The notes under the pieces are model-generated. The model made no database searches. It saw nothing but the letters and a program-made list of their open reading frames with translations, and was not told the DNA's origin. This document shows, piece by piece, positions 1-59,748 of a stretch of 64,000 bases of DNA (the first letter of the stretch is position 1; each line of letters starts with the position of its first letter). Where the stretch lies: positions 434,001-498,000 of IMG/VR virus record IMGVR_UViG_3300046517_002304; one strand, given 5' to 3'. The position numbers were made by a program, and so were the translations under genes.

Positions 1-484
1 CAAAAGCACAAATGGGAAAATCAACCCCTGTCGCCACTTCCTTACGATAATAACCATAGCCTACTCCTCCGCCTGTATCTTTTTTTTCAACTGATTCTGA
101 AGAAGTATCTCCGTCATGCATAAGCCGCTTCTTAACAGAAAAATTATAAGGATGCGACATTCTAACAATAAACTTAGCGGCATCCGTACGATGCACTGAT
201 GGGCAAAGAACAACACGTTTATTGCCATACTCATTATTTAATGCAATAACAGGAAGACAAGTTTTCTGACAAATAATGTCAGGCAAATCATTATCTACAG
301 CGCAAGACGCAAGAATACAAGGAGAAAAAATACTTTCTGCCCTTGCTAAAACAGTGTCTAACGCCGGACCAATGTTGGGTATGCGAAAAATTTGATGAGG
401 AATATTCCAAAACGACAAATCATTGGATAAGTACCCAACATCATCGCTCTCTTTATTAGTGGTTATTATAAATACGGGTTTCAC
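1..484 (-). CDS. PurE-fold protein, degenerate; runs off the left edge
   Basis: Not in ORF track. GTG at 484 overlaps the upstream TGA and the frame stays open to the edge: MKPVFIITTNKESD...FWNIPHQI...CILASCAVDNDLPDIICQKTCLPVIAL resembles PurE, but the SAHR motif is missing. Confidence 0.55.
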   Translation of the reverse strand, partial: MKPVFIITTNKESDDVGYLSNDLSFWNIPHQIFRIPNIGPALDTVLARAESIFSPCILASCAVDNDLPDIICQKTCLPVIALNNEYGNKRVVLCPSVHRTDAAKFIVRMSHPYNFSVKKRLMHDGDTSSESVEKKDTGGGVGYGYYRKEVATGVDFPICAF

Positions 485-1395
485 GGCTTCACCAACACCT
501 TCTCGGCACTTTTGTCACAGTATACGAATGTGTTCACCCAACCGGTTTCTTCCTTGCCAACAAACTTTGTATATCCATCTAAAAATCTGGTAATATACTT
601 GTTTGTCTGAGCGGAATAAGTATATGACCTCAATGCGTCTTTATAATTATCTTTCTTCTGATCATACAAAAGACCAGCTCTTACCAATATGGTAAACAAA
701 GATCTCTTCAGGGTATCGGCCCTCCAAAAACCAGATGGATCAATTTCAATAATATTGTACTGATTGGTTTCGTAAAACTTGGTGAACTCTTTTAATCCAA
801 GCTTTACTTCAAGTCTATGGATGAACCTAGCAACCCGACGAGATCTAAGACGGTAATCATTATAATTCTTAGCAGTTCCTTTGCTAATACTTACCGTACA
901 AAAGAACATCTTTTCCGTTTTTGCATGGAATGACTTAGCAAACTCTTCTCTACAATGAAACCACTTAACCGTACTGTTTTTCTCGTTATCAAACACCCCT
1001 AAGTGCTGACCTTGCGGCTCGTAGATAGAAAAGCAACATGCCCGCATTGGGCGAACCATTGGAATAATATACTTCGCCGACAAACTATCATATGTCTTTT
1101 TAATTTCTTCATTTTCCAACGTAGTTTTTGCAAACTCGCAACATTCATCTATAATATTTTGGTAGTTGCTTCTTTTAGCATCAATTCTATCAAACTTCGT
1201 ATAGATAGGCTCCCACTTGTCGCCCTTTTGATTCAAAACTAAGTAAACTGCGGTGTCTGTAGACAAAGGTTTCTTGGCAGCAACTACAGTTAACTTTCGC
1301 GTTGTTAAAAACACCCGTCCAGGCTTTACGAAATGCATCGTAACTTTGCCGGAACAATTATCAGATTTTAATTCGCAACTTCCAAGTAATCTCAT
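481..1395 (-). CDS. hypothetical protein, paralog family B (CR[ED]xF ... FW ... R-S motif)
   Basis: 304 aa ORF; C-terminal half aligns by eye with ORFs at 57596, 58584 and 59209. Confidence 0.8.
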   Translation of the reverse strand: MRLLGSCELKSDNCSGKVTMHFVKPGRVFLTTRKLTVVAAKKPLSTDTAVYLVLNQKGDKWEPIYTKFDRIDAKRSNYQNIIDECCEFAKTTLENEEIKKTYDSLSAKYIIPMVRPMRACCFSIYEPQGQHLGVFDNEKNSTVKWFHCREEFAKSFHAKTEKMFFCTVSISKGTAKNYNDYRLRSRRVARFIHRLEVKLGLKEFTKFYETNQYNIIEIDPSGFWRADTLKRSLFTILVRAGLLYDQKKDNYKDALRSYTYSAQTNKYITRFLDGYTKFVGKEETGWVNTFVYCDKSAEKVLVKP

Positions 1396-1404
1396 GATTA
1401 TCCC

Positions 1405-2148
1405 TTAGACATCAAGGATACGAACAGTACGACCAACGTTAGTTTTAACCTGAATAACTTTATTAATATAAGCATCTTCACGACCGGCGCATAAACTGAG
1501 CACTTCGGTTCTACCTTTAGATACTTCTCTTAAAACGTCATCTAGTTCTTTTGAGAAGAGAGCCTTGTTTTCATCTAACGCTATCTTGCTACATGGAGGG
1601 TAAGATGACAAAGATACAACCTTGCAATCAGATGTGTAATAATTATCAAAATACTCCTTAACACTGACAACTGTATTGTAATATGCATTCTTTGCGTAAA
1701 CCGGGGGATTATCACGAAGCATGGCTAAGGATAAATCATCAATATTATTGTGAGTATAATTACCAGCAGGAATATTATGGGGGAAAATTTCACATCCCAG
1801 TATCATCAGTTTTTCGCCATTATTAAATATGGCCCCAGAATTAGAAACATAATGCAACTTCGGGTATTTAGCACAAACCTTGATTATACTTTGACGCATA
1901 TGGTTAAGCGTGTAAAAAGCAAAATCATTAGCCCCGAGTATAAAATAAATATGGCAAGCTGAAACGCCGTGTATGACACGCAGATAATACTCAACAGAAT
2001 CATGTGCCGCAATATTACCGGCAATACATAAAACATCTAGTTTCTTTGTCTCAGTAGACAAATGGTCCAAAAATGCCTCTAAATTTTCAGAAGAAGCAAC
2101 GTGCAAATTGATGTTCGCTAAAAGTCCAATTTTCATGAACGATCCCAT
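1405..2148 (-). CDS. calcineurin-like metallophosphoesterase-fold protein with degenerate metal motifs
   Basis: IGLLANINLH / LCIAGNIA / FILGANDF occupy the DxH / GD / GNH motif positions. Confidence 0.65.
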   Translation of the reverse strand: MGSFMKIGLLANINLHVASSENLEAFLDHLSTETKKLDVLCIAGNIAAHDSVEYYLRVIHGVSACHIYFILGANDFAFYTLNHMRQSIIKVCAKYPKLHYVSNSGAIFNNGEKLMILGCEIFPHNIPAGNYTHNNIDDLSLAMLRDNPPVYAKNAYYNTVVSVKEYFDNYYTSDCKVVSLSSYPPCSKIALDENKALFSKELDDVLREVSKGRTEVLSLCAGREDAYINKVIQVKTNVGRTVRILDV

Positions 2149-2771
2149 AAAATAGTTTTTTGAATTTGTTTTAAGCCGACATTTGTTTCATAGTTGGAAT
2201 ATATCCAAGCTGGAATAATAGGATACTCCAAAAACGTATCTGGGTCAATATCTAAATTTCTTTCACCATCTAACCGATTTTGCTCATAAAAAATTGATTG
2301 GAAATTTTTGGGCAAAAGATTGACCGCTACGAGCGTTCGTACATAACCATATTCCCAAGGATATTCTATACAAAAACCCTCAAGGCGATCTACGCGGTCA
2401 ATCATCAAATCCCAATTCGCCTGGTTATAGAAAAAAACTTCTAGCGCGCCAGATGAATTTTTGTCAAAAGTCAATCCAAGTCCACGAGGAACAACGTGTG
2501 GGATAAATGCCTTGCTGTGACCATAATAACAATGATGCTCATGTCCTCTAGACGGGCAATCTTTGTGAACTCCCATTAGATAAGAATTAACATGCCGTCT
2601 CGGGAGATTCCTTAAAGTCCCAAACACTGCCATAGGAAATGGGAAGGCGTATCTCTGGCTTACAGGCGCAGCCAGAAAGCGATCATACAACTTCCAAAGA
2701 CCTTTGAGTTTAGGCGACAACCAACGCTCCCTTTTCTTCATTGTCGTCGTCGGATGATTCGTAAACAGCAA
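2133..2771 (-). CDS. gamma-glutamylcyclotransferase (AIG2-like) family protein
   Basis: AVFGTLR motif, LEVFFY, VDRLEG, YVRTLV; true start may be the ATG at 2741. Confidence 0.7.
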   Translation of the reverse strand: MLFTNHPTTTMKKRERWLSPKLKGLWKLYDRFLAAPVSQRYAFPFPMAVFGTLRNLPRRHVNSYLMGVHKDCPSRGHEHHCYYGHSKAFIPHVVPRGLGLTFDKNSSGALEVFFYNQANWDLMIDRVDRLEGFCIEYPWEYGYVRTLVAVNLLPKNFQSIFYEQNRLDGERNLDIDPDTFLEYPIIPAWIYSNYETNVGLKQIQKTILWDRS

Positions 2772-3051
2772 TCACGTCTTCAACTGGAATAAGGAACCGA
2801 TTCTCGCCGTCTTCATACGATGCAGGCATAGATCTAGCTAAACTACAAATAGCCTTTGAATACTTTCTAATGTTTACGTAATCAAAATCATGTTCTACCT
2901 GAGGCGAAACAGCAAGAATTCTACAATTTCTAGTAGGAATTTTAGCGGTATCGGGTAATGCAATTCCACCTTTTGTCATACCTGAATCGGCCTCTTTAAG
3001 CACCAATACTCTCGGGCCGGACGGAACAATAGAAGTTAATTCTTTTTTCAT
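2710..3051 (-). CDS. groES: co-chaperonin GroES-like
   Basis: IVPSGPRVLV...TKGGIALPDTAK...ILAVSP and C-terminal LIPVEDVIAV. Confidence 0.8.
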   Translation of the reverse strand: MKKELTSIVPSGPRVLVLKEADSGMTKGGIALPDTAKIPTRNCRILAVSPQVEHDFDYVNIRKYSKAICSLARSMPASYEDGENRFLIPVEDVIAVYESSDDDNEEKGALVVA

Positions 3052-8844: not shown

Positions 8845-9987
8845 TTATCGGAATTTTTTGTCGGCAACTGACGGAATCGCTTCATGGTCTTCTAAGTCAG
8901 ATTCTCTCAGAACAAGCTGAAGAAGGCTAAGCATAACAAAATAGTCGCGCTTCAAAGTCTTTTGTTTCACACCCTTAATTTTCGTTTCAAGGTCAGAACG
9001 AATATCTCTGATCTGCTTGGTGGAAAGAGGACGACCCTTTCCAGTTCTTGCGCCAAGTGTTTCATTTACTTCACCGATTACATCTGCCGTAATCGTCTTG
9101 TTGCCACTGGCCTTATTTAACGCCGCCATTCTCTCTTTGGCAGTGCTTAAGTCTGACGATGTGCTTTTCAGAACCTCCGTAGACTTCTTGAGGATACCGC
9201 TTGCCTCTGCTTTTCGGGAAAGCGGAGCACGTTTAACCATCACCTCTGCTACTTCAACATCAGTTTGAGCCTGCTCAACCTTTTCCTTCAGAGTCTCCAC
9301 TTGATCTATGGCGCTTTGAAGCCTGTTGGCATAATCCTTCTCCACCAAATTTCGAGCAAAGTCTATTACTGATTTAATCTTAGAAGAATTTGTCTTCAAC
9401 AACTGCAAGGCAGAACTACGGTTAATTATTCCAGAATTAAGAGCCTCCAATGCATACCTCGGTAAATTACCGATGCTGATTGTTTGAGAAACCCAACTGG
9501 GCGATGTGTCAAATATTCCAGCGATCTGGTCCCGAGTAAATGCCTTTTCGCCTTTTTCATTTGTCTCATTATCCAATCGCATACAAGCTTCAATACGTTC
9601 TATCTCTGTTAAGTCTACTCTCTCCAAATTATCGGAGTAAGCAATTCCAAGTGCGGTCATATCATCGCACTCAAAACACTTAACGTCTACGTTCGCAAAA
9701 ACCTCTTTCGCGGGCAACTTCTTCTGATGCTGCTGAGAATAACACGACTCTCCATCTTCTAGAAGCTTATAAATAGATCGTAAGCGACGTTCCCCACCAA
9801 GAAGCAGGTATTCGTTGTTTAATTTTCTAACGATGAGAGGATAAAGCAACCCTTGTGCGCAAATACTAGTTCTTAACGACTTCATCCTTTCGCTATTAAA
9901 AACAGTTCTCGCATTCTGCAAACTACCTCTATTAATAATCTTGATTTCGCCAACCGACAACTTCAGATGTTTAACGCTGCTTTCCAT
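8845..9987 (-). CDS. ParB/Srx-domain protein with HTH and long coiled coil
   Basis: GLLYPLIVR, LLGGERRLRS, DNLERVDLTEIE, SWVSQTISI. Confidence 0.85.
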   Translation of the reverse strand: MESSVKHLKLSVGEIKIINRGSLQNARTVFNSERMKSLRTSICAQGLLYPLIVRKLNNEYLLLGGERRLRSIYKLLEDGESCYSQQHQKKLPAKEVFANVDVKCFECDDMTALGIAYSDNLERVDLTEIERIEACMRLDNETNEKGEKAFTRDQIAGIFDTSPSWVSQTISIGNLPRYALEALNSGIINRSSALQLLKTNSSKIKSVIDFARNLVEKDYANRLQSAIDQVETLKEKVEQAQTDVEVAEVMVKRAPLSRKAEASGILKKSTEVLKSTSSDLSTAKERMAALNKASGNKTITADVIGEVNETLGARTGKGRPLSTKQIRDIRSDLETKIKGVKQKTLKRDYFVMLSLLQLVLRESDLEDHEAIPSVADKKFR

Positions 9988-14343: not shown

Positions 14344-14372
14344 CTGCTCATTCCACTCAATAACCTATTTTT

Positions 14373-45313: not shown

Positions 45314-45584
45314 TTTGATCATACCCCTGCTTAACAGTTTTGAGATATGGGTACCCGGGACAGTTTCCGCCGTCGCCACAAGGCACACCAAGCATTGAAA
45401 TGTCTTGGCCGTTTTTCTTGTTCTTGGCTGTGAAATCTTTTACCTTAGCATCAATAGATGCTTTTTGACCTGTTAGTTTTAAACAAACGCAGGTCGTGTA
45501 ATTAATTTCGTCCAAGTACCTACAGGTCTTCGCCCCGCCGTAACGGAGACAGACATTCTTAAGCTGTTTTTCGCTAAGAGCCAT
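45297..45584 (-). CDS. hypothetical Cys-rich protein
   Basis: 95 aa ORF with several Cys. Confidence 0.7.
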   Translation of the reverse strand: MALSEKQLKNVCLRYGGAKTCRYLDEINYTTCVCLKLTGQKASIDAKVKDFTAKNKKNGQDISMLGVPCGDGGNCPGYPYLKTVKQGYDQNVKKP

Positions 45585-45586
45585 GC

Positions 45587-46084: not shown

Positions 46085-46466
46085 TTTTGCTTCCTAACTT
46101 GCCAACAATCTTGTCTACTCGCTCTTTAAACCAAGTGGTTAAAGCAGCAACATTCATTCCCTTTGGGATATTCAAGATCACAGTATGCATTTTATCATTT
46201 GGCAAAACTTTGTCAAGTAGATTTGCCAAAAATAATTCAATAGCAACACCTTCTTTTTCAGCCGCAACCTTCAACTTCTGAATAACTGCATCGGCTAAAA
46301 CCAATCCGTTATTCACAGCCGGGGGCAATCCGTCCATTCCACTACTGCCAACAGCCCAATTCTCCATAATGGTTTTAGCCATCACAGATGCAGGAACTGC
46401 TTCGCCAGCCTGTGCTTTAATAGCATCAAATACTGAATCCTCTACTTTAAACCTTAACTCTTTCAT
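46077..46466 (-). CDS. possible ribbon-helix-helix DNA-binding protein
   Basis: LRFKVEDSVFDAIKAQA and LVLADAVIQKLKVAAEKEG repeats. Confidence 0.4.
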   Translation of the reverse strand: MKELRFKVEDSVFDAIKAQAGEAVPASVMAKTIMENWAVGSSGMDGLPPAVNNGLVLADAVIQKLKVAAEKEGVAIELFLANLLDKVLPNDKMHTVILNIPKGMNVAALTTWFKERVDKIVGKLGSKNV

Positions 46467-46708
46467 AATCGGTCCTTTTGCTTGTGCTGTGCGCGGTTTC
46501 TTTCGATCTTATCACGTTGCCGACGTTTTTCAGATGGCTTGCAGTATCGTTCATACTTATCAATTTGATCCTTCACGCCGCCTGTCTCTGAATAGAGAGT
46601 ACGAAACATCTTCATCATCTTGTCCAAGTTACGCTTCTGTTCTTCATAAGAAGCGTTCGGACTTAACCGACTAGTAATTTTAATGTTAACCACACTCATA
46701 ATTTTCAC
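46463..46708 (-). CDS. rpsU: ribosomal protein bS21-like
   Basis: NLDKMMKMFR...G...Y.KPSEKRR basic pattern. Confidence 0.65.
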   Translation of the reverse strand: MKIMSVVNIKITSRLSPNASYEEQKRNLDKMMKMFRTLYSETGGVKDQIDKYERYCKPSEKRRQRDKIERNRAQHKQKDRL

Positions 46709-47844
46709 ACCTTTTCATTATTGACCTTAATAAAATTTAGACCAATCTTTCTGGTCTTTCTCTTGCGTACATTGTCGTACACTAATATATCGTCCGTCTC
46801 AACGGCAGACTTGAGATTATTTCGGTCAATAGTCGGAAGAAACTGCTTTAGCTTAATCAGAACTTGTATTAGAGCATAATTCCAATCAATTTCAATAGCA
46901 TTATTGAATAAAAATGCATATTTTTTCTGGATTCCTACGGCACATAAGTCATCTAACTCATACTCTTTTGTACCAAAATACCTTTGGCGTATATCCGCAC
47001 ATAAATATGGAGCGCGAGCCATAATGGCAAACTTTGATAGACCTGAACAGATGTCTAGCACGCAACTGCTGGCGCGCATAGCCGAAAGCACAGATAAAGA
47101 GTTCGCCTCCGTCACATAAGCGCACTTGTCGGTAAAAATACTAGACACATCGTATGCCGATGAACTAAGCCAAACTACTGGAAAAACTCCTTCGGCAATA
47201 AGAGAATTAATTAGTGTGTGCCAAAGATGAATGCTTACAGATGCGATTTCTTCACGCCCATTACGCCATATCTTAATCTGCGGAGATGGACAAATAAAAA
47301 CACTATAATTAAACTTAGATATCTTTTTAGCCAACTCCAAAGATGGTGAAGGAATAGAAGGCAAAAAGTAATTAATTTCCTTATAATCATCAAAGAATTT
47401 TTGTGTAAGTCCATTATTGTAATAAATCGCAAACATAGATCCATTAATTACTTCGCCAGGAAAATATCGTAATAGATTAGACTCATACACAGAAAGTGAT
47501 GAAGAGTTATTCTTAAACCCATCTGCCTTTTTGAAAATCTCAGAAGCTGAAACAGAATCGGTTAATTGCCAGTATTCATTCACGCCAGCATATGGAAATA
47601 AACTAGAATTCCCTGGGTGTGAACAAAGTATAACATACCTTGGCCTACGAATCTTCTTAATATAATTCTTTAGCAATAACGACGACAAAATAAAGGTCGC
47701 TTTGCAATCACCGAAAAAGAATATTACCAATATGTCGCTAAGATTCGTTGGTATCTGCGACTCTTCATATTTTACTCTAGTAAACCCGGTGCGCTCTGCT
47801 GCTCTAGAAAGAAACTCGGCTGGATTAAAAATTTCAGATGTCAT
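46705..47844 (-). CDS. GT-B (GT9-like) glycosyltransferase-like protein
   Basis: CSGLSKFAIMARAP resembles the GT9 C-terminal motif. Confidence 0.5.
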   Translation of the reverse strand: MTSEIFNPAEFLSRAAERTGFTRVKYEESQIPTNLSDILVIFFFGDCKATFILSSLLLKNYIKKIRRPRYVILCSHPGNSSLFPYAGVNEYWQLTDSVSASEIFKKADGFKNNSSSLSVYESNLLRYFPGEVINGSMFAIYYNNGLTQKFFDDYKEINYFLPSIPSPSLELAKKISKFNYSVFICPSPQIKIWRNGREEIASVSIHLWHTLINSLIAEGVFPVVWLSSSAYDVSSIFTDKCAYVTEANSLSVLSAMRASSCVLDICSGLSKFAIMARAPYLCADIRQRYFGTKEYELDDLCAVGIQKKYAFLFNNAIEIDWNYALIQVLIKLKQFLPTIDRNNLKSAVETDDILVYDNVRKRKTRKIGLNFIKVNNEKV

Positions 47845-48959
47845 TTTGGAATTAAGAATTCATTTTGCTTGAGTAGAAACTTAATATAGTCCGGATTTTC
47901 TACTTGTCCTATAATCGGAGCAAAATTATTTTGTTCAATCTCTTGGAGCGCTTGAAGGACTAGCTCTATACATTTATCCTGTGCATAATAAGCATTCCAA
48001 AAATGCGAGATAATAATCTTACGCTTGTTATCTTTATCGGCCAAGAACATTCTATAGCCTTCTTGTCCACTAGCCGTTTTAGACAGGACTTGCTGATCTG
48101 ATTCTGTAATAATGTGTGGCGTGCCCGACATCGCAGCTATTCTATGCGATGCAGTAAAAAATTGCACAGTTGCCTTAACCTGACTAGTTAAGGCAAAAGT
48201 ACATTCTATATCTTTAGACTCAGGTGTTTTAGTAAAATCAATTACATCGCCAGGAGGACACGGCAAGCTCGTTTCATCTCCGGTCCATATCACATTATAG
48301 CCTTTATCTTTTATAGATTTAATTAAATTTCCATAAAACTCAGGACTTAGGTTTCTACCATAACAAGCACGATTCCTACCGGTGACAATCACGCTATTTG
48401 ACTTGATGTACTTTCTAATAGAATCCATCTTATCTTGAGAAGGTGTCGGAGGAAAAACTGTATCTAATTTAACATCGGGTATCTTCGGATATATTTCCGT
48501 AAGAGCAATCTTTCCTAGTTCATTAGCACCAATGACCGTTCCATGATAATCTAATAAAACTTCTAAGCGTTTTAAGTTCTTGCTGTTGTGATGAAATGCA
48601 CGAGTATATTCTTTTAAATATCCATGCTCTGGAAAAATCTCTATTATTTCATCTACCAAATGTTTGTATAAATAAGAAGTTCCTGGCCAAGTCAAAACAG
48701 TAGAATATTTCCCAGCATAACGGTCCCGCATCAAAAAACTGATACAGGCTATTCCAGCGATTGTGTTAGATCCGAATTCGCCCATTAAACTAAATATTAC
48801 ACAATTACGCCTGCCTGGTTTAGGGCGATTATTACACTTTATAATCTTGAAATTCATGCTGCCCAGCATTTTTTCTACTGGTGTGGGCAATCTTGAACCA
48901 ACATTGTATATCTTGCCATCAACTATCGTATGTGGATATATTTTGGTCTGGAACATCAC
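47841..48959 (-). CDS. GT-B (GT9-like) glycosyltransferase-like protein
   Basis: GYNVIWTG, TASHRIAAMSGTPHII. Confidence 0.55.
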   Translation of the reverse strand: MMFQTKIYPHTIVDGKIYNVGSRLPTPVEKMLGSMNFKIIKCNNRPKPGRRNCVIFSLMGEFGSNTIAGIACISFLMRDRYAGKYSTVLTWPGTSYLYKHLVDEIIEIFPEHGYLKEYTRAFHHNSKNLKRLEVLLDYHGTVIGANELGKIALTEIYPKIPDVKLDTVFPPTPSQDKMDSIRKYIKSNSVIVTGRNRACYGRNLSPEFYGNLIKSIKDKGYNVIWTGDETSLPCPPGDVIDFTKTPESKDIECTFALTSQVKATVQFFTASHRIAAMSGTPHIITESDQQVLSKTASGQEGYRMFLADKDNKRKIIISHFWNAYYAQDKCIELVLQALQEIEQNNFAPIIGQVENPDYIKFLLKQNEFLIPK

Positions 48960-48990
48960 AAATTAACCTAGTAATTCGTCCACAGAACTT

Positions 48991-49416
48991 CTAGCCATCT
49001 AAACAGCAATCCTTTATTTCAACTACAAATAAACCCTTCGTTTGCTCAATTTCGGGAGGATCGTATCCATCCATTTTAGCACTGCCTTCTCGTAAATAAT
49101 TTCCAATTTTATCTTTAAAGTTATTTTTGTTCGTTGTTCCGTATTGCCAGCCATTTCGGAACTTTACATTCTCATGGAGCCAATCATAAAAGTGGGCATC
49201 TGGAATATTAATATTGTCAACAAATGTTCCCGTATAATCCATTTTTTCTTTTACACACTTTGCAATATGCTTGCCTGCTTGATCTATAAAATTTGTAGCA
49301 TCTTCTTTCGATGCAAATGATGCTACAAAATCAATATATTCAATATATGAAAAGTCATCCGCCACAGGTGAGGGATAATAAGAACAATTCGGTCTAACTA
49401 CAGCAAAACAACTCAT
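48991..49416 (-). CDS. hypothetical protein
   Basis: 141 aa ORF. Confidence 0.65.
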   Translation of the reverse strand: MSCFAVVRPNCSYYPSPVADDFSYIEYIDFVASFASKEDATNFIDQAGKHIAKCVKEKMDYTGTFVDNINIPDAHFYDWLHENVKFRNGWQYGTTNKNNFKDKIGNYLREGSAKMDGYDPPEIEQTKGLFVVEIKDCCLDG

Positions 49417-49724
49417 TGAATCTTCTCCATTTCCTTAATCTGCTTGTACATGTTATATCTTTTAAACCCATCGAAAGTAGTATTCCTACGAATATCGGAA
49501 TACTTGTCACTCCAAACAATTCCATATCTTATCTGCGCAATCCCACTAGCCATGCATCCATCATAATCATCTGGAATATAAACATAATCATCGCTAGCAA
49601 AAACATAACCTGCGTCTAAAACGATCTGCTTCTCCTCAAGAGATAAGGGGCGATTCATGTATTCATTAAATTCTTTAATCTCTTGTTCTGTAGGCATAAC
49701 CTGCACATTACTCTCAATTTTCAT
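49413..49724 (-). CDS. hypothetical protein
   Basis: 103 aa ORF. Confidence 0.65.
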   Translation of the reverse strand: MKIESNVQVMPTEQEIKEFNEYMNRPLSLEEKQIVLDAGYVFASDDYVYIPDDYDGCMASGIAQIRYGIVWSDKYSDIRRNTTFDGFKRYNMYKQIKEMEKIQ

Positions 49725-50130
49725 AAATCAAATTTTTTTCTTTTAAAAATGAAACAATGCTAAAATGATTGTTATCTTCAAGTGCATTACTTGCCACCTT
49801 GCCATAAACATCCACCAAAATACCATCTTTTGATTTAGAATGCACAAACAAATTAGCACTGCTACAACTCTGAAGCACATCTGCCATAGCGTCACGGCCA
49901 CCTTCTTTGACCTTTAAATATAACTTTACAAAGTACGACTTTCCATCAATCATAACAGACAAATCGTTATCAGATAAAATATTAAGATTTTCCAGCGGGT
50001 ATTCTTTGCCAACATCCAATGAAGACATAACTGTAGCTGTCGGCGTATGAAAGTAATTCTTAATTCTCTCTCTTCCAAGCCATAACACTAATAAAAGCAA
50101 CGCCGCTAATGCCATGAGTTCAATTTTCAT
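49714..50130 (-). CDS. membrane-anchored protein, possibly a degenerate thermonuclease (SNase) fold
   Basis: N-terminal TM; ILSDNDLSV..DGK..VKL...GRDA...ILVDVY...SIVSFL follows SNase spacing without DGDT/DxPE. Confidence 0.4.
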   Translation of the reverse strand: MKIELMALAALLLLVLWLGRERIKNYFHTPTATVMSSLDVGKEYPLENLNILSDNDLSVMIDGKSYFVKLYLKVKEGGRDAMADVLQSCSSANLFVHSKSKDGILVDVYGKVASNALEDNNHFSIVSFLKEKNLIYEN

Positions 50131-50657
50131 GCCTGCTTCTCCTCATGCTCATCAATAGCCTGCTTAATCTGAAGCAAGTCTTCATACCAAAGACCGTACC
50201 GAGAAATTGACTTGGAGAATACAGAGATATCAAGTTGCGCAACTTCCCAGCATACGCTTCCATCATCATTGTACTTAATGTTTGTAGAGTATTTTGTACA
50301 ACCGCGTTCATCCTTTACTTTTACCTGCTTACCGTTCTCCTCTATTGTCTCGGGAAGATACTTCGGACTTATCCTTGATAAATTAAGATCTAAAAGTGCT
50401 TCGCGCTGAGCGTCATTGCATATATCAAGCCAGGCATCAGATGAAATAACAATCGCCATTTCATACTGTTCGCCAATCCATATCTTGGATAGCGGCGAAA
50501 ACTTAGATACCTTACCCCAATTAAATTTATTTCTTATAAACGGCTTAGCATCACAAAAAGCCAGCGCAATCGTGGCCAACTCAAGATTTGGGTGATTCTT
50601 TAATTTAACTTCCTGAAGCTTAGCTGCTTCAACTGGACCGGCTTTCCAAATTAACAT
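50127..50657 (-). CDS. phage metallopeptidase-like protein with HExxH lost
   Basis: IVISSDAW...QREALLDLNLSRI where DHELxH is expected. Confidence 0.55.
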   Translation of the reverse strand: MLIWKAGPVEAAKLQEVKLKNHPNLELATIALAFCDAKPFIRNKFNWGKVSKFSPLSKIWIGEQYEMAIVISSDAWLDICNDAQREALLDLNLSRISPKYLPETIEENGKQVKVKDERGCTKYSTNIKYNDDGSVCWEVAQLDISVFSKSISRYGLWYEDLLQIKQAIDEHEEKQA

Positions 50658-50718
50658 ATATCTCTCCTAATTGTTTTAGATAATATGTTATCGGTAGAAT
50701 AAAGAAAGGAGTTTAACC

Positions 50719-51183
50719 CTAAACTCTATCGCCCATTAAATCATCACTCAAGAAATCAATCTTGGCGCGCATTTCATCAAGGAGCTTTTTAACTTCGGCT
50801 GCACTTTCCTTAGTTAAATTAGAATTTAAGGCAAATATTCCATTAGTAGAGATGTGATGTAATCTTTCAAGTACCTCAACAGAAACCTTAAGATTATGCA
50901 ACGCATCTAACTTTGGACCAAAAGAAAAATCGGGAGTCGCCTTATTATCGCCGTCATTTCCAAGCGTATATGTATCAACTGGATTATCGGCCATTCCTTT
51001 AGGCTTAAAAGAAAGCCTATGAACCTTCTCTTCTGGACTATACTGATCTTTGTCATAGTAATCAACAGACTGATTGCCGAAAGCATCATTGGCTCTCTGT
51101 GTGCCATTCATTAGCTCTGCCTCCTGCTCTTCTTTAGACAGTGCCGCAGAATAAGCCTCAATCAATTCTCTCATAGATTCCAT
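50719..51183 (-). CDS. acidic hypothetical protein (late)
   Basis: TAAATA at 51202-51207 and GGAGG RBS upstream. Confidence 0.7.
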   Translation of the reverse strand: MESMRELIEAYSAALSKEEQEAELMNGTQRANDAFGNQSVDYYDKDQYSPEEKVHRLSFKPKGMADNPVDTYTLGNDGDNKATPDFSFGPKLDALHNLKVSVEVLERLHHISTNGIFALNSNLTKESAAEVKKLLDEMRAKIDFLSDDLMGDRV

Positions 51184-51238
51184 ATAGATTTTCCTCCATA
51201 TTATTTATGCCGCCCACAACAAAAACCGATAAACTAAC

Positions 51239-53689
51239 ATGGAAGATTGTAAGCGACTAGTACTTCTGTGCCAAGAAGCACTAAAAACAAAAGGCATAGA
51301 CGACACAATACACAATAACCGCCTCAGGTGGGAACTCAAGGAATTACAGGTCAAAAATGACTGCGGATATTTCCTGAACATCCATGATAAAGGCGTTAAA
51401 AACCAACCTAACCATAAAAATGTATTAGTTCCCTATTTGCTTGATATCTGTAATGAATTTGATATTACCAAGCTTCCAGAATTCCTAATGGGAGAAATGC
51501 CAGATATTGACGTTGACTACCTCCCAGAAATACAACAATATCTCAAAAATGATTATGTTCCCAAAGCGTTCGGAGCAGAATACGTTTGCAATATAGGAAG
51601 CCACAATACGCTTGGCGTAAAATCTGCGCTTATCGACACAGTAAGAATTTATAGCAAAGATAGAGACGAAATTCTTAAGATTACAACTAAACTCCAAGAC
51701 AAGAATGACGAAGGCAAGCCTATTTCCTTTGAAGAAGCGATTAACTCTAATTCCGACTTAAAGAAGTATTTGGCCGAAAATCCAGAAATTAAAGAAGCAG
51801 CGGGAAAGCTGGTCGGTAAAACTAGAAGCTTTGGGCAACATGCGGCTGGTGTTATCATATCCAGCGTACCTTTAAAAACCCTAGTGCCACTTATTTCCGG
51901 CAAAGATGGGATGCAATGTAGCGCATGGGGCGAAGGACAGCATAGCCTAGATTTAAGTACAGTAGGATTAATTAAATTTGACTTTCTAGGAAGCGAATCC
52001 TTAAACAAAGTCATGCAATGCCTTAAGCTTATAAAAGAAAGACATGGTATTGAAAAAGTATGTGCGGCACCAGGTGGAGACAACTGGTCAGACATTTCTT
52101 ATCTTAACGATCCAAAATGCCTAGAAATGGCTAGTAAAGGCGATCTCAAAACTATTTTCCAGTTTGATTCCGACGTTGCGCGTAAAATGTGCAAAGATGG
52201 TGGCGTTGATAGATTTGAAGATTTGGTAGCCTATACGTCATTAAACCGCCCAGGATGCTTGGAAATGGGTACAGATGTGGAATTCATCAAGCGCAAAAAG
52301 GGCGCTTCATATGAGGTCCACCCGCTTCTAGAGCCTATCCTAAGAGATACTTACGCGCTAATGTTATATCAGGAGCAACTCTTCCGTATTCTTAACGTGG
52401 TGGGCAAAATTCCAGAACATCAATGCATGGAGGTTCAAAAAGCAGTATCTAAGAAAAAAGTAGATAAGTTCGCAAAATATAAAGAAATGTTCGTAGAAAA
52501 TGGCCAAAAAGTATTAAACCAATCAAAAGAAGAACTAGAAAAACTTTGGGCATTAATTGAAGCGTTCGCCAAGTACTCCTTCAACCTCGCGCACGCCTGT
52601 AGCTATACCTATGTTTCTTCCAGAATGTTATGGTTAAAATGCCACTACCCACTTGAATGGTATGCGGCCTGTATGTCGTCTTTAAAAACAGCCGATTCTA
52701 AGCTACAAGAGTATCGTTACGATGGTGTTAAGCATGATATAGTTTTTAACCGTCTTGACATTAACAAATCCAAGAGTAATTTTGCTATCGCAGAAGACAA
52801 CTCAATCTACTATGCTTTCTCTAAGATTAAGGGAATCGGTGATGATATTGCGGATAGAATTACATCATTGCAACCCTATGCTGATTTAAAGGATTTTCTA
52901 CATAAGTTCGGAGTTCTTTCTAATACACTAAAGCCGCTTATAGCACTAAGAATATTCGGCGATGACACAGTTTCTCTATGGAAGGAATATGAAAGATTTA
53001 AAGATGGCATTGACCAGAAAATAGAAGATTTAAACACTAAGCACGCTGAAACAATAAACAAGCACGCTTCGGAATTAATGTCTCTGCTTCCAGAACAATT
53101 GATGGATATCAATTCAATAAGTGAAATAGACAAATTAGAAAACATTATAGATGCTAAAATCTATAAGAAGTTATTAAAAATTAAAGAAAAAAACGGCAAA
53201 ACGATTGAGACATTTAATAAGAAACTAGCCAAACTTGAGAATTATGAAGTTAAAATTGAGCCTGAATACGAAAAGCTACTCCTAGACAAAGATGCAGCGG
53301 AAATCGCATTTTACGGATTTCCTTGGGACAGCCCATTATCCAAATACGTATCGGCAGAAGAACATCACTTTGACTGGATGGATGCTAACGGATTAGAAGT
53401 AGCGCCCATTAATGTAAGAATTACAAACATACAAGAAAAACAGGGAAAAGTTAAGTTTTATCAATTAACGGTTCAGGATATTTTAGGTGCGGAAAAGAAA
53501 GCAAACATATGGAACTCTGACTATAATATCTGGAAGGAATTGTTAGTAGTTGGTGCGCTAATAAGAATACAGTTAAAGGCTCCAAATGGCGGTTTTCCAA
53601 CTTATACGATGACATCGGAACGATTTAAAAAATATGTACGTGGAGTTAACGATTTTAGAATAGTGAATTTAGCAGGAGAAGTAAAATGA
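51239..53689 (+). CDS. dnaE: DNA polymerase III alpha subunit (C family) lacking the N-terminal PHP domain
   Basis: PDIDVDY, GQHAAGVII, KFDFLG, IFQF, LYQEQ, YSFNLAHA, C-terminal OB-like region; 816 aa. Confidence 0.93.
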   Translation: MEDCKRLVLLCQEALKTKGIDDTIHNNRLRWELKELQVKNDCGYFLNIHDKGVKNQPNHKNVLVPYLLDICNEFDITKLPEFLMGEMPDIDVDYLPEIQQYLKNDYVPKAFGAEYVCNIGSHNTLGVKSALIDTVRIYSKDRDEILKITTKLQDKNDEGKPISFEEAINSNSDLKKYLAENPEIKEAAGKLVGKTRSFGQHAAGVIISSVPLKTLVPLISGKDGMQCSAWGEGQHSLDLSTVGLIKFDFLGSESLNKVMQCLKLIKERHGIEKVCAAPGGDNWSDISYLNDPKCLEMASKGDLKTIFQFDSDVARKMCKDGGVDRFEDLVAYTSLNRPGCLEMGTDVEFIKRKKGASYEVHPLLEPILRDTYALMLYQEQLFRILNVVGKIPEHQCMEVQKAVSKKKVDKFAKYKEMFVENGQKVLNQSKEELEKLWALIEAFAKYSFNLAHACSYTYVSSRMLWLKCHYPLEWYAACMSSLKTADSKLQEYRYDGVKHDIVFNRLDINKSKSNFAIAEDNSIYYAFSKIKGIGDDIADRITSLQPYADLKDFLHKFGVLSNTLKPLIALRIFGDDTVSLWKEYERFKDGIDQKIEDLNTKHAETINKHASELMSLLPEQLMDINSISEIDKLENIIDAKIYKKLLKIKEKNGKTIETFNKKLAKLENYEVKIEPEYEKLLLDKDAAEIAFYGFPWDSPLSKYVSAEEHHFDWMDANGLEVAPINVRITNIQEKQGKVKFYQLTVQDILGAEKKANIWNSDYNIWKELLVVGALIRIQLKAPNGGFPTYTMTSERFKKYVRGVNDFRIVNLAGEVK

Positions 53690-56245: not shown

Positions 56246-56788
56246 TCAATCCCCATTACCCTTTTTGTAAATTTTCTTGATCTGGGATAAATCTTCCTTA
56301 GACGGCTTGCTACCACGATACTTCTGATATAATGGCTGCGCCTTGCACTTATGCTTCCAAAACTTCTCAGTAGCAATCTGTATTTCACATATCATGCCAC
56401 CAATTACAATATCTACATGCACAGTTCCATAATAGCCAAACTCATACTCATTAGGACTATCATTATGGGCGACCTTCTTAACAATGAAATGCTTCTTGAT
56501 ATTATCAACAATTTTAGATATTTGATTTTTGGTATCTACAAGAATCGCGGCCCTTAATATGTCAAATACCTTAGATGGAGACTTATTCCTTTTCTTGGTT
56601 TTATTATTAAACGACTTCTCGCTTTTAATATCTATGACAATCTTATGTCCATCAGCAGAATGCTTGAGTAGCGTAGCAAATTTTGGCTTCAATTCTAAAG
56701 CCATTTTCTTTGCTTTATCATAAGTTTGAAAATCCTGCTTTTTAGCAATCGGCTGAGGATTTTTCTCTATCCATTCTTTAAAGTCCAT
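56246..56788 (-). CDS. RelA/SpoT-fold nucleotidyltransferase (small alarmone synthetase-like)
   Basis: IKSEKSFNNK, DILRAAI, GYYGTVH, CEIQIAT; TAAATA-N4-ATG; starts MDFKEWIE. Confidence 0.75.
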   Translation of the reverse strand: MDFKEWIEKNPQPIAKKQDFQTYDKAKKMALELKPKFATLLKHSADGHKIVIDIKSEKSFNNKTKKRNKSPSKVFDILRAAILVDTKNQISKIVDNIKKHFIVKKVAHNDSPNEYEFGYYGTVHVDIVIGGMICEIQIATEKFWKHKCKAQPLYQKYRGSKPSKEDLSQIKKIYKKGNGD

Positions 56789-57008: not shown

Positions 57009-57039
57009 CAAAAGCGGCCTAGGAAATTCCTAGGCCGCT
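57009..57039 (-). terminator. intrinsic terminator
   Basis: AGCGGCCTAGGAA-T-TTCCTAGGCCGCT followed by TTTGTT. Confidence 0.85.
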
Positions 57040-57100
57040 CACTATCCAAAAAGGAGACTTGGCTCCTGACAGAAATTATATACCAACTACGCTTTAATAA

Positions 57101-57595
57101 TTAAAAGCCGCCAACTATTTCATGCACTTCATCAACACTAATTCCTAACACTTTAGAAGCATTTTTAATCTTCTTATGAAGAAGGGTATAATTAGCCTTC
57201 ATTCGCTTTACGTGCTCTTTCAACTGAGGGTGATCGGTATTATATAAAGCGTCCTCTCCCGCGTCCCAAACATCAGCATATGCATCGGCAACATCAATTT
57301 CACCAGAGCTAAAATAAGCACAAGCCAAAGATACATTATACACAATCGGGTGTTGAACTGTGACCTGTATATCGGTACTAGCCGTAACCGAAATAAGAGA
57401 CTTTATTTCTCGTATAAGAGGATGTCCCGCTAGTTTGTTTTGTTCATCATACTGAATATGGTAAATTTTCTGATTAATCTTGCTCTGCAACGCCTGCAAA
57501 GCTTTTAAATCATTAACGCTATCTATATCAACGCCTTTTTTAGCGCCCTTGATTTTAGTTTTAATAGCTTTAACTTTAGTTTTCATATTTTTCAT
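57101..57595 (-). CDS. hypothetical protein, paralog family A
   Basis: Aligns with 58126..58587 (IDSVND/VEKIND; HPQLKE/HPVIKQ; LGISVDEVHEIV/FGISEGDVWDIV). Confidence 0.8.
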   Translation of the reverse strand: MKNMKTKVKAIKTKIKGAKKGVDIDSVNDLKALQALQSKINQKIYHIQYDEQNKLAGHPLIREIKSLISVTASTDIQVTVQHPIVYNVSLACAYFSSGEIDVADAYADVWDAGEDALYNTDHPQLKEHVKRMKANYTLLHKKIKNASKVLGISVDEVHEIVGGF

Positions 57596-58147
57596 TTAAT
57601 CGCCTATTAATTGTTCAAGATCATGCATTCTAAGATTTGATACAAAGCCACATCTATCATTATAATGGTATCTTGTATTCACGCAACCAGATGCAAACCG
57701 ATTAATAAACTTACGCTTTTTACCAAACGGCCAAACTCTATATTTTAACAAATAACTTAATACCGACCATCGCATAGAACTACCGCGCCAAAACTCGCCA
57801 GGCTCAATGCAAAAGGTGTGCTGGTTGGTAGTACAGTAAATCACAGCAGGGTTTTTTAACTTTAACTTGGCTTCAATATCGGACACGACCTTAATGCGTC
57901 CTGGATTATTTGTCGTAATAAAAAATGCTTTAAACTTTCCACTTCGGAAGTAATGTAAGTAACCCTGAAAAGAATCCCGACATGACATAGGATTCCATCC
58001 ATTGGCCGAATAAACACTAGGAAGATAAAAACTAAAAGATGAGTCTACCGGAAACGGAACTCCTTCTGGAAGTTCCGGCAAACTTTCTATGTAATTACGA
58101 GAAAACATGGCATCTCTCATTGTCCTCATAAATTGACTATGTCCCAA
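57596..58147 (-). CDS. hypothetical protein, paralog family B
   Basis: CRDSF, FWRGSSMRWS, RFASGCVNT. Confidence 0.8.
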   Translation of the reverse strand: MGHSQFMRTMRDAMFSRNYIESLPELPEGVPFPVDSSFSFYLPSVYSANGWNPMSCRDSFQGYLHYFRSGKFKAFFITTNNPGRIKVVSDIEAKLKLKNPAVIYCTTNQHTFCIEPGEFWRGSSMRWSVLSYLLKYRVWPFGKKRKFINRFASGCVNTRYHYNDRCGFVSNLRMHDLEQLIGD

Positions 58148-58587
58148 ACATCGCCCTCTGATATGCCGAATTCTTTCGCAGTCTTTAATACTTTTTCTCT
58201 AATCTGTTTTTGAATTATTCTAATATCCTTAATCCTTTGTTTTATTACAGGATGATTGCCACCCTGTATTTTATTCTCTTCTACAGCAGGATAATAATCC
58301 CCTTTAAGTTCCACGTAGTCTACTGCAATTTCGCTGCCTTGATCGTATGAATCTACGATTAGAGAAACTCTAAATTCCAGTGCTTTTTTAGAGGGCACAG
58401 TAACATCAAACTCACACCTTCCATTAATCTGCTGTGCCAATAAACGAATTTCTTTTACCAATGAAAAGCTTGAAAGCTTATTCTTCTTAGCACGATCCTG
58501 ACTATCAATCTTAGATATTTTATTATCAATACTTTCTCTAAGCTTAGTCAAAACCTTACGATCATTAATTTTTTCAACATCAATCAT
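58126..58587 (-). CDS. hypothetical protein, paralog family A
   Basis: See 57101..57595. Confidence 0.8.
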   Translation of the reverse strand: MIDVEKINDRKVLTKLRESIDNKISKIDSQDRAKKNKLSSFSLVKEIRLLAQQINGRCEFDVTVPSKKALEFRVSLIVDSYDQGSEIAVDYVELKGDYYPAVEENKIQGGNHPVIKQRIKDIRIIQKQIREKVLKTAKEFGISEGDVWDIVNL

Positions 58588-59204
58588 ATCGCATCTCCCA
58601 TAATTTTCTTGAGTTCTTTACGATTCACAAAGCATTTATCAACTTGCTTCGGAGTTAAATTATAAAAATGATCACACCAGCCAGTAAATTTAGGCGCATC
58701 ATAATAACTATAACCATTATTATGCCTAAAAGTCTGATAGCGTACATAATGATTGCCGTTTAAAAACTTATTAACGGCAACCCTCGTATTGCGCGATGAA
58801 AAATACTCTGACCTACGTATCGTAGAAACAACGTTGGCCCTATAGCTTCTACCGGCTCTTATTAAAGCTGTCAGTAAAGAAAACCTAACTCTCTTCATCC
58901 AAAAACCGGTCAGCTTAATACAAACAATATTCTTTCCGTCAGTTCTATATCCATTACACCGAAATCTTTTGGGTACCTTAGACTTAATCTGAAAATCTTT
59001 CAAAAATTTTATAATATTTCCTAAGTGAGCGCCACTCTTACACTGATAAAACAATCTTCTCGGATACGGATTATAGCGAAACGTATCATCCACAGATTCA
59101 CGACAATACTCCCAATACTGGTAATTGTCGTTTACTAAATAAAATGAATCTTTATATTCTCCATAAATATCATCGTTAGATGGAGCTTTAATCAATCTTT
59201 TCAT
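58584..59204 (-). CDS. hypothetical protein, paralog family B
   Basis: CRES, FWMKRVRFSLLTALIRAG, KFLNG, TGWCDHF. Confidence 0.8.
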   Translation of the reverse strand: MKRLIKAPSNDDIYGEYKDSFYLVNDNYQYWEYCRESVDDTFRYNPYPRRLFYQCKSGAHLGNIIKFLKDFQIKSKVPKRFRCNGYRTDGKNIVCIKLTGFWMKRVRFSLLTALIRAGRSYRANVVSTIRRSEYFSSRNTRVAVNKFLNGNHYVRYQTFRHNNGYSYYDAPKFTGWCDHFYNLTPKQVDKCFVNRKELKKIMGDAI

Positions 59205-59208
59205 TAAG

Positions 59209-59748
59209 TCACCTACAGATTAACTTGGAAACATCAGGAAGTAATTTTAAATTTTCAAAAATACCAAAATCAGGATTGTAATGAATCGCCGTGTTCACAC
59301 AGCCTGATTTAAACTTTGCTAAAAATTCTTTTTTCAAATCAGTATCAAAGTATGGGCCAACATACCCCCGAGCCTTAAATACAGAACTAAAAACAGAAAG
59401 CCTCATCGGACTAGCAAGCCAAAATTTGCTCATTTCAATATAAGTGATACGTTTCTCATCAGTAGGAAAAAAATTAGTGCGATCTAAAGTATCAATATTT
59501 AATTCTTGTTCAATATCTTGAACCGGCTGAATATGCATTTTAGATGCACCCTCTGGTGCTCTCAAATAAAGAATGTGTCTTTTATCTTCGCTAATTTTCA
59601 AAATTCTGCTCTGAAATACGTCCCTGCAAAGATACCACGCTTTATCTGTAAAGCTGAGAAAGTCAGCTATTAAAAATGGATACGACGAGAAATCATAATT
59701 AGCATGTGTTGGGGGTATCTTTACACTAGATTTAAATGGCCAAAACAT
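59209..59748 (-). CDS. hypothetical protein, paralog family B
   Basis: CRDVF, FWLASPMRLS, KFKSGCVNT; start moved to ATG 59748. Confidence 0.8.
   Translation of the reverse strand: MFWPFKSSVKIPPTHANYDFSSYPFLIADFLSFTDKAWYLCRDVFQSRILKISEDKRHILYLRAPEGASKMHIQPVQDIEQELNIDTLDRTNFFPTDEKRITYIEMSKFWLASPMRLSVFSSVFKARGYVGPYFDTDLKKEFLAKFKSGCVNTAIHYNPDFGIFENLKLLPDVSKLICR

What the first reader, a model, noticed from the sequence alone, without database searches (positions are those of the whole stretch)
481..59748. Unknown paralog family with CR[ED]xF...FW...R-S motif, partly in an A-B-A-B-B tandem array
Seen: four ORFs (481-1395, 57596-58147, 58584-59204, 59209-59748) share CREEF/CRDSF/CRESV/CRDVF, a later FW followed by R-x-S, and a (R/K)F..G segment. 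Two other ORFs (57101-57595, 58126-58587) are paralogs of each other and alternate with them. Inference: an expanded, diversifying two-gene module, as often seen for anti-defence or host-interaction effectors. The invariant Cys-Arg-acidic triplet could be catalytic.
Basis: partly seen in the sequence, partly recalled or inferred. Interest (0 to 1): 0.6.

Follow-up and report, generated by a model that had tools for sequence, protein, structure and literature searches.

The report
Uncharted Cys-Arg-Glu protein family, huge phages
The four look-alike genes are real members of a large protein family of huge soil phages that no database describes. It has an invariant Cys-Arg-acidic motif and is probably a thiol enzyme, but its pairing with the second small gene family is peculiar to this one phage.

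Summary
The window lies in a complete 511-kb phage genome from soil and rhizosphere samples.

- **Family A is real.** The genome holds 7 clear members, 4 of them in the window, plus one divergent branch (A8). A profile built only from foreign sequences finds all 7 (E 8e-54 to 5.5e-20).
- **Family A is large and undescribed.** About 1,200 clusters match in metagenomes. Pfam, PHROGs, NCBIfam, PADLOC and PDB sequences give no match. A very confident model (pLDDT 96) has no fold match (best Z 4.7).
- **Conserved residues suggest an enzyme.** Cys (151/151), Arg, Asp/Glu, Glu, Thr, Trp, Arg/Lys, Ser, Thr/Ser and Arg/Lys are nearly invariant. No His or Lys is conserved.
- **Related huge phages carry 2-7 copies each**, in old orthologous subfamilies. 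The usual site is just downstream of a DnaE-like polymerase gene.
- **Two gene links recur.** A thioredoxin gene sits beside an A gene in two different arrangements. The A8 branch always precedes a COOH-NH2 ligase gene.
- **B1 and B2 are true paralogs**, but B is found nowhere else, so "A+B" is a local arrangement, not a conserved module.
- **The array is one operon:** WGR, A4, A3, B2, A2, B1.

My best guess, at low to moderate confidence, is a thioredoxin-linked single-cysteine enzyme family. The anti-defence reading has no support from these tests.

The parts
481..1395 (-). A1, 304 aa. The A domain covers about residues 125-304. The N-terminal extension is shared with orthologues P0016 and P0021. 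A1 is the closest own-genome relative of the A copy that sits after the DnaE-like gene in related phages.
57101..57595 (-). B1, 164 aa, the last gene of the operon. Its ATG follows the stop of A2 directly. It is a paralog of B2 (27% identity) and has no relatives elsewhere.
57596..58147 (-). A2, 183 aa from the TTG. It is more likely 177 aa from the ATG at 58129, which overlaps the stop of B2 as ATGA. It belongs to the short subfamily and is sister to A4.
58126..58587 (-). B2, 153 aa. Its ATG overlaps the stop of A3 (ATGA).
58584..59204 (-). A3, 206 aa. It belongs to a different old subfamily that keeps the canonical insert, and it has Gln where the family has its conserved Glu.
59209..59748 (-). 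A4, 179 aa from the ATG at 59748. The frame stays open up to 59814, overlapping the WGR gene. Short subfamily.
59750..59983 (-). A gene for a stand-alone WGR domain, the first gene of the operon. Its stop lies 1 nt before the ATG of A4.
   Evidence: (PF05406, E 4.8e-16)
60010..60038 (-). Sigma-70-like promoter match, TTGACC-17-TATATT with TG before the second hexamer, upstream of the WGR gene. This is a consensus match only.
57012..57040 (-). Terminator-like hairpin (13 pairs, 8 of them G-C) followed by a T run, 60 nt after the stop of B1.

Best explanation
The 'A' genes encode a previously undescribed alpha/beta domain of about 170-190 residues, here called the CRE domain. It is common in huge phages and is most likely an enzyme.

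In the confident model, the invariant Cys sits at the N-terminal end of a helix, flanked by an invariant Arg and an acidic residue. It probably acts as the nucleophilic or redox-active thiol. The conserved Glu, Thr, Trp, two Arg/Lys, Ser and Thr would form a pocket for an anionic substrate. With only one conserved Cys, the enzyme would need to be recycled by a separate thiol protein, and thioredoxin is the candidate.

Each huge phage keeps several old paralogs, presumably with different substrates or partners. Some are fused in tandem, which suggests a dimer. In this phage one locus has grown into the operon WGR, A4, A3, B2, A2, B1. B is a lineage-specific small protein of unknown role, not a general partner.

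Shown: the family, its size, its conserved residues, its copy number, the lack of any database or fold match, the gene neighbourhoods and the operon layout.

Inferred: catalysis by the Cys, the thioredoxin coupling, and the nature of the substrate, which remains unknown.
For: - **Size of the family.** 1,211 cluster representatives match at E<=1e-3 and 803 at E<=1e-10.
- **Conservation.** The polar residues above are near-invariant in 152 sequences, and no His or Lys is conserved. All seven own copies keep them.
- **Models.** The A2 model has pLDDT 84.7. The canonical member has pLDDT 96.3 and pTM 0.92. In the canonical model Cys41 immediately precedes helix 42-51.
- **Thioredoxin neighbours.** A thioredoxin gene lies directly downstream of an A gene in three related genomes: G001 52284-52853 then 52886-53176, G002 164694-165290 then 165368-165607, and G003 147190-147720 then 147759-148049. 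In this genome and in L011 it lies one small gene upstream of a different A subfamily. These genomes hold only 1-4 thioredoxin genes each.
- **Tandem fusions.** 4 of 150 representatives are A-A fusions.
- **Copy number.** Five relatives carry 2-7 copies each.
- **Old subfamilies.** Each own-genome lineage has orthologues in other phages.
Against: - No activity, substrate or structure is known for any member.
- No fold relative exists to lend a mechanism. The best scores are Foldseek E 0.19 and VIA Z 4.7.
- The thioredoxin adjacency is seen only in related phages and in two arrangements. It is absent beside the most common copy, the one next to the DnaE-like gene, and in G004.
- An invariant Cys can also be structural or a modification site.
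- Other recurrent neighbours point elsewhere: a DnaE-like polymerase, a DHH protein, COOH-NH2 ligases and Metallophos genes.
Confidence: 0.35

Rival explanations
1. A is a non-catalytic replication accessory or nucleic-acid-binding protein. It would work with the phage's DnaE-like polymerase, and its paralogs would serve other DNA or RNA transactions.
For: - In about 21 of 25 non-redundant IMG/VR loci the A gene sits in a fixed block: AAA ATPase, DnaE-like Pol III alpha, a 166-aa gene, A, a 200-aa gene, a PhageMetallopep-like gene, a 143-aa gene and a DHH gene.
- The fused A-A gene in L006 lies near DnaB, Pol A and RNase H genes.
- The conserved helix is rich in Arg/Lys.
- The tandem fusions suggest a dimer.
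Against: - Those loci come from one clade retrieved with a single peptide pattern, so the synteny may be inherited rather than functional.
- This genome has the same block (window about 45000-53689) without A. Its closest copy, A1, lies 50 kb away.
- Two to seven copies per genome, and an invariant Cys-Arg-acidic triplet, are unusual for a structural replisome part.
Confidence: 0.2
2. A works in an amide-bond pathway, for peptide or gamma-glutamyl-type modification, together with GS-fold COOH-NH2 ligases. It could be an accessory enzyme or the protein that is modified.
For: - The divergent A8 branch has Cys-Lys-Asp in place of Cys-Arg-Glu/Asp. hhalign against A gives probability 98% and E 2e-13.
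- A8 directly precedes a PF14395 COOH-NH2 ligase gene and an alpha/beta hydrolase gene in all four phages that carry that ligase.
- An Amidoligase_2 gene lies 2-4 kb upstream of an A gene in G002, in G003 and on the P0013 contig.
- Peptidase_C26 and GGACT genes lie near A-A fusions in L010 and L009.
Against: - Only the divergent branch is strictly linked to a ligase. The canonical copies are merely nearby, in gene-dense genomes.
- A shows no sequence relation to the ligase (hhalign probability 0.4%).
- The long structural alignments to GS, PafA and Dop are not significant (Z 3.6-4.1, rmsd about 5 A).
Confidence: 0.15
3. One reading: A and B form a diversifying two-gene effector module for anti-defence or host takeover.
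For: - The local expansion is a single operon led by a WGR-domain gene.
- The operon lies in a region with a RelA/SpoT-like gene, a CAP-domain gene and a DksA/TraR-type gene.
- B is lineage-specific, as accessory genes often are.
Against: - B is absent from every other A locus and genome tested.
- A and B did not duplicate together.
- The A subfamilies are old and orthologous, with invariant residues.
- No variants were seen across four metagenome runs.
- PADLOC gave no match.
Confidence: 0.1

Closest known systems
Thioredoxin-recycled single-cysteine enzymes, such as PAPS reductase CysH, 1-Cys methionine sulfoxide reductases and ArsC-type arsenate reductases (from general knowledge)
   Same: There is one conserved Cys with Arg residues for an anionic substrate. 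In the model the Cys lies at a helix N-terminus, and a thioredoxin gene sits next door in several genomes.
   Different: There is no sequence or fold similarity to any of them. This is a functional analogy only, and the substrate is unknown.
Small alpha/beta sandwich domains: DCoH/pterin dehydratase, Pcc1, the NusG NGN domain and KH tandems
   Same: Residues of about 40-125 of the model superpose loosely on these beta-alpha-beta-beta-alpha units.
   Different: Z is only 3.5-4.7 with 4-10% identity. The N-terminal hairpin and the C-terminal helical part are not covered, and no conserved residues are shared.
GS-fold carboxylate-amine ligases: glutamine synthetase, GmaS, PafA/Dop and the phage COOH-NH2_lig family PF14395
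   Same: These give the longest structural alignments (128-147 of 186 residues). A ligase of this fold is the fixed neighbour of the divergent A8 branch.
   Different: Z is 3.6-4.1 with rmsd about 5 A. hhalign probability against the phage ligase is 0.4%. A is half the size and lacks the cluster of metal-binding Glu residues.
Multi-copy paralog families of jumbo phages, as surveyed in PMC7824862
   Same: There are several diverged copies per genome, some in tandem, in genomes over 200 kb.
   Different: I found no mention of this family in that survey, having searched it only for ligase and WGR terms. The survey treats stand-alone WGR proteins as DNA-binding transcription factors.

Membership tests
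Papain-like cysteine peptidases (Peptidase_C39-like, IdeS/Mac), a lead from the language-model search | A catalytic Cys paired with a conserved His (and Asp/Asn) | tested here: not met
   No conserved His in 152 aligned members. The lead itself was weak: score 0.94 with only 145 shared features.
Papain-like cysteine peptidases | Papain-like fold or a Pfam match | tested here: not met
   No Pfam match in 73 members. No peptidase appears among the fold matches.
GS-fold COOH-NH2 ligases (PF14395, PF12224, GS, PafA/Dop) | Sequence-profile similarity to the family | tested here: not met
   No Pfam match. hhalign of A and of A8 against the phage ligase family gave probability 0.4%.
GS-fold COOH-NH2 ligases | Significant structural match to the GS-like catalytic domain | tested here: inconclusive
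   Long alignments, but Z 3.6-4.1 and rmsd about 5 A, which is below any useful threshold.
LAGLIDADG homing endonucleases, the top weak Foldseek rows | Alpha-beta-beta-alpha-beta-beta-alpha fold with a conserved acidic residue ending the first helix | tested here: not met
   Foldseek E 0.19-1 and TM about 0.2. The N-terminal region is not conserved in the family.
ADP-ribosyltransferases with an R-S-E triad, considered because of the Arg-x-Ser motif | ART fold with ordered Arg, Ser-x-Ser and Glu-x-Glu motifs | tested here: not met
   No ART family in Pfam, PHROGs or NCBIfam and none among the fold matches. The motif order here is Cys-Arg-Glu, Glu, Thr, Trp, Arg-x-Ser.
Conserved two-gene module (toxin-antitoxin-like or effector plus partner) made of A and B | The two genes are linked in other genomes | tested here: not met
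   B is absent near A in 36 foreign loci, absent from 5 related genomes, and absent beside the other 4 own-genome copies.
Conserved two-gene module made of A and B | Physical interaction of A and B | tested here: inconclusive
   The complex prediction gave no verdict. It counts neither for nor against binding.
Known anti-phage defence or counter-defence proteins (PADLOC-DB) | Profile match | tested here: not met
   No consistent match in 73 members.

The most novel reading that the evidence does not exclude
The CRE domain founds a new class of thiol-dependent enzymes with a fold not yet seen in solved structures. Huge phages would carry several paralogs of it, recycled by phage thioredoxin, and one branch would be dedicated to a COOH-NH2 ligase pathway. 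That would reveal an unrecognised chemistry, acting on nucleotides or on modified peptides or metabolites, that large phages bring into soil bacteria.
Probability: 0.25. Interest if true: 0.75.

Novelty: categorically new. Interest (0 to 1): 0.5.

Why it matters
Huge phages are full of genes without a function. Here more than a thousand sequence clusters collapse into one well-defined domain. It has a clear candidate active site, a very confident model, no known relative, and testable partners: thioredoxin, a COOH-NH2 ligase and a DnaE-like polymerase block.

That makes it a good target for structure determination and activity screening, and for a new family entry in Pfam or PHROGs. The A+B array that prompted the finding is a local curiosity of one soil phage lineage.

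"Categorically new" refers only to the protein family and its fold. The biological role is not known, and the multi-copy pattern itself is ordinary for jumbo phages.

Tried and rejected
- **Family libraries.** Pfam, PHROGs, NCBIfam and PADLOC scans of the six ORFs and of 73 family members gave only scattered single hits.
- **PDB sequences.** A profile search gave nothing.
- **Fold searches.** I ran Foldseek against PDB twice and against BFVD, the VIA wide search twice, a VIA second look, and the ESM Atlas search by shape. There was no significant match. The only likely relative is an uncharacterised protein of an uncultured Caudovirales phage, at E 4.7e-3.
- **Language-model look-alikes.** For A2 the search pointed to C39/IdeS peptidases, which I rejected because no His is conserved. 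For B1 it gave nothing usable.
- **Complex prediction of A2 with B1.** No verdict (score 0.00). It is not evidence either way.
- **Named phages.** blastn of the array and tblastn of a family member against 50,697 phage records gave no match.
- **Locus searches.** A single-protein search in viral contigs (A1) and one in prokaryote genomes (the canonical A of L013) found no close relatives.
- **B against other profiles.** hhalign of B against A, against the N-terminal extension of A1, and against the four conserved neighbours of A in related phages was negative throughout.
- **Neighbours of A1.** By eye, the genes at window 1405-2148 and 2133-2771 look like Metallophos and GGACT. This could not be confirmed: there was no Pfam hit and BLASTP gave E 0.06-0.07.
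- **Literature.** The 2009 amidoligase paper (PMC3268129) is not held. A search for 'COOH-NH2 ligase' with 'phiEco32' found nothing.
Full report
**What is there.** The window is bases 434001-498000 of a 511,233-bp IMG/VR virus record with direct terminal repeats, judged complete. Its G+C content is 39%. I call the four-member set A1 (481-1395), A2 (57596-58147), A3 (58584-59204) and A4 (59209-59748/59814). The two-member set is B1 (57101-57595) and B2 (58126-58587).

**Is the similarity real?** BLASTP among the window's ORFs gave:
- A2 vs A4: E 7.5e-15.
- B1 vs B2: E 2.9e-12.
- A1 vs A3: E 1e-4; A1 vs A2: E 1e-3; A1 vs A4: E 0.013.
- A3 vs A2 or A4: not significant pairwise.

Searching the whole genome added three clear members, all outside the window: 408312-409037, 419529-420011 and 420013-420534. 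It also added a weak one at 8956-9855. The cleanest test used a profile built only from 143 foreign sequences. It finds all seven own copies at E 8e-54 to 5.5e-20 and the eighth at 6.7e-8, and no other ORF of the genome scores below E = 1.

**Size and conservation of the family.** A word-index search found only the phage's own proteins, so I ran the exhaustive profile search. It returned 1,211 cluster representatives at E<=1e-3 and 803 at E<=1e-10.

In 152 aligned sequences the near-invariant residues, in A2 numbering, are as follows:
- Trp50
- Cys55 (151/151)
- Arg56 (150/151)
- Asp/Glu57 (151/151)
- Phe59
- Glu91 (143/152, otherwise Gln)
- Thr105
- Trp119 (152/152)
- Arg/Lys125
- Ser127
- Thr/Ser130
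- Arg/Lys134
- Phe150
- Gly153
- Gly166
- Trp167

No His or Lys is conserved. All seven own copies keep this set, and A3 has Gln at the Glu position. Four of the 150 representatives are tandem A-A fusions.

**Not a known family or fold.** Pfam, PHROGs, NCBIfam and PADLOC scans of 73 members gave only scattered single hits. A profile search of PDB sequences gave none. The members that carry a name are called 'hypothetical protein'.

AlphaFold2 models are confident. A2 has pLDDT 84.7 and pTM 0.82. A canonical member, L013:7947-8507, has pLDDT 96.3 and pTM 0.92. The predicted layout is:
- an N-terminal beta hairpin;
- a helix that starts right after the Cys;
- a beta-alpha-beta-beta unit;
- a long helix carrying the Arg-x-Ser..Thr...Arg residues;
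- a small helical C-terminal part.

No library gave a significant match:
- Foldseek against PDB: best E 0.19-0.25.
- Exhaustive VIA search: best Z 4.5 and 4.7.
- VIA second look: Z 4.7.
- ESM Atlas by shape: TM below 0.37.
- BFVD: only an uncharacterised protein of an uncultured Caudovirales phage, at E 4.7e-3.

The loose resemblances are to common small alpha/beta sandwiches (DCoH, Pcc1, NGN, KH). There are also long but poor alignments to GS-fold ligases (Z 3.6-4.1, rmsd about 5 A). A weak match does not prove a new fold, but nothing known can be named.

**Where the family lives.** A degenerate peptide pattern retrieved 30 IMG/VR loci on contigs of 14-436 kb. In about 21 of the 25 non-redundant loci, A sits in one fixed same-strand block. 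The order is an AAA ATPase, a DnaE-like Pol III alpha gene (about 909 aa), a 166-aa gene, A, a 200-aa gene, a PhageMetallopep-like gene, a 143-aa gene, a DHH gene, two paralogs of about 385 aa, and further on a peptide deformylase gene.

This phage has the same block at window about 45000-53689, but without A. The closest own-genome relative of the A copy found in that block in the other phages is A1, 50 kb away. A second foreign contig, L011, is syntenic with genome 408-427 kb and carries orthologues of A5 and of the A6/A7 pair. Five related genomes of 225-436 kb hold 2-7 A copies each.

A tree of 80 domains puts the seven own copies into at least four old lineages, each with foreign orthologues:
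- A short subfamily containing A2+A4 and A6+A7.
- A5.
- A1.
- A3.

The family is therefore an old, multi-copy component of this group of huge phages, not a recent burst.

**The array.** Transcription runs WGR gene (59983-59750), then A4, A3, B2, A2, B1. The junctions are 1 nt, 4 nt, an ATGA overlap, an ATGA overlap (if A2 starts at 58129), and 0 nt. A good sigma-70-type match lies upstream at 60038-60010, and a 13-bp hairpin with a T run lies 60 nt after B1. It is one operon.

A2 and A4 are sisters and A3 is from another subfamily, so an A-B unit was not copied as a unit. Contigs from four soil or rhizosphere runs cover the array without a single difference. A 99%-identical A3 variant exists in the protein collection.

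**B.** B1 and B2 are 27-29% identical over their whole length. No relative was found by any of these routes:
- the word-index search;
- a profile search within 8 kb of A in 36 foreign loci;
- a search of five related genomes;
- hhalign against A, against the A1 extension, or against the conserved neighbours of A.

The other four A copies of this genome have no B beside them. These searches are less sensitive than the exhaustive search I spent on A, so distant B relatives may exist. As far as tested, however, A and B are not linked elsewhere. The A2+B1 complex prediction returned no verdict.

**Clues to function.**
1. **The residue pattern.** There is a single invariant Cys at a helix start, next to Arg and an acidic residue. 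A Glu, a Thr, two more basic residues and Ser/Thr are also conserved, and no His is. This fits a thiol enzyme acting on an anionic substrate better than a Cys-His protease.
2. **Thioredoxin.** In G001, G002 and G003 a thioredoxin gene follows an A gene within about 30-80 nt. In this genome and in L011 the order is MoxR-like ATPase, a small gene, thioredoxin, a conserved 70-aa gene, then a short-subfamily A. These genomes have only 1-4 thioredoxin genes each. The link appears in two arrangements and with two subfamilies, but all within related phages. The DnaE-adjacent copies have no thioredoxin nearby.
3. **A divergent branch.** A8 is about 300 aa and has Cys-Lys-Asp in place of Cys-Arg-Glu/Asp. 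It is homologous to A (hhalign probability 98%, E 2e-13). It precedes a PF14395 COOH-NH2 ligase gene and an alpha/beta hydrolase gene in all four phages that carry that ligase. Amidoligase_2, Peptidase_C26, GGACT and Metallophos genes also recur within a few kb of A genes. This is suggestive, but I could not test it statistically.
4. **Replication context.** See the synteny block above.

**Verdict on mechanism.** I commit to a thioredoxin-linked single-cysteine enzyme family at about 0.35. The rivals are:
- a non-catalytic replication or nucleic-acid partner (0.2);
- a component of an amide-ligase pathway (0.15), which is not exclusive of the first;

The remaining probability is for something not yet imagined.

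**Novelty and interest.** The family has no entry in the four libraries tested, no solved relative, and no named member among those looked up. As a protein family and possibly a fold it is new. The multi-copy pattern is ordinary for jumbo phages, and the A+B pairing is local to this lineage. Interest is moderate at 0.5. The family is a well-defined, abundant and testable unknown, but nothing yet shows a surprising biology.

- Only genetic code 11 was used.
- The costly exhaustive search was used once, after the word search and the family scans had left the protein open.

Noticed in passing
genome 8956-11486 (outside the window; L012:3957-6487): A conserved three-gene module: the divergent A-like protein (Cys-Lys-Asp), a phiEco32-type COOH-NH2 ligase (PF14395), then an alpha/beta hydrolase. 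It is found in four huge phages at 31-43% identity.
   Followed up: yes
genome 420503-420721 (outside the window; L003), L011:4500-4712, L047:247-462: A conserved protein of about 70 aa (52-60% identity, no family) directly precedes the short-subfamily A gene in three phages. In this genome and in L011 it follows a thioredoxin gene.
   Followed up: partly
window 56246-56788 (-): A 180-aa protein with a RelA/SpoT nucleotidyltransferase domain (Pfam E 2.2e-7), a small alarmone-synthetase-like gene, lies about 0.3 kb downstream of the array.
   Followed up: no
window 59750-59983 (-): A stand-alone WGR-domain gene heads the A/B operon. A jumbo-phage survey (PMC7824862) treats such proteins as DNA-binding transcription factors.
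   Followed up: partly
window 60073-60552 and 60556-60762 (-): A CAP/SCP-domain protein with a hydrophobic N-terminus (Pfam E 4e-19), followed by a 68-aa DksA/TraR-type zinc-finger protein (E 2.8e-9).
   Followed up: no
window 60983-61249 (-): An 88-aa ORF with a signal-like N-terminus and a Tyr/Asn/Pro-rich repeat tail of the form (N)PYY(N).
   Followed up: no
window 51239-53689 (+), 46705-47844 and 47841-48959 (-): A DnaE-like Pol III alpha gene. In the L013 homologue the Pfam hits start in the NTPase/palm part and no PHP domain was reported. There are also two adjacent paralogs of about 375 aa with no Pfam hit that are conserved in the replication block of all relatives. Their size is close to that of a sliding clamp, but this was not tested.
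   Followed up: partly
window 24030-25073 (-) and 2710-3051 (-): An Amidoligase_2 (PF12224) gene and a GroES-like Cpn10 gene (E 3.4e-8). A peptide deformylase homologue lies at 45587-46084.
   Followed up: partly
window 1405-2148 and 2133-2771 (-): The two genes upstream of A1 carry motifs that recall Metallophos (GNxxxHD, GANDF) and GGACT (GTLR, LDRLEG). Neither reaches significance: there is no Pfam hit and BLASTP gives E about 0.06.
   Followed up: partly
L031:10834-13050 and 13894-15819: In a related 436-kb phage, an NAD-dependent DNA ligase gene and a TROVE (Ro60-like) gene lie about 2-5 kb downstream of the A-thioredoxin pair.
   Followed up: no
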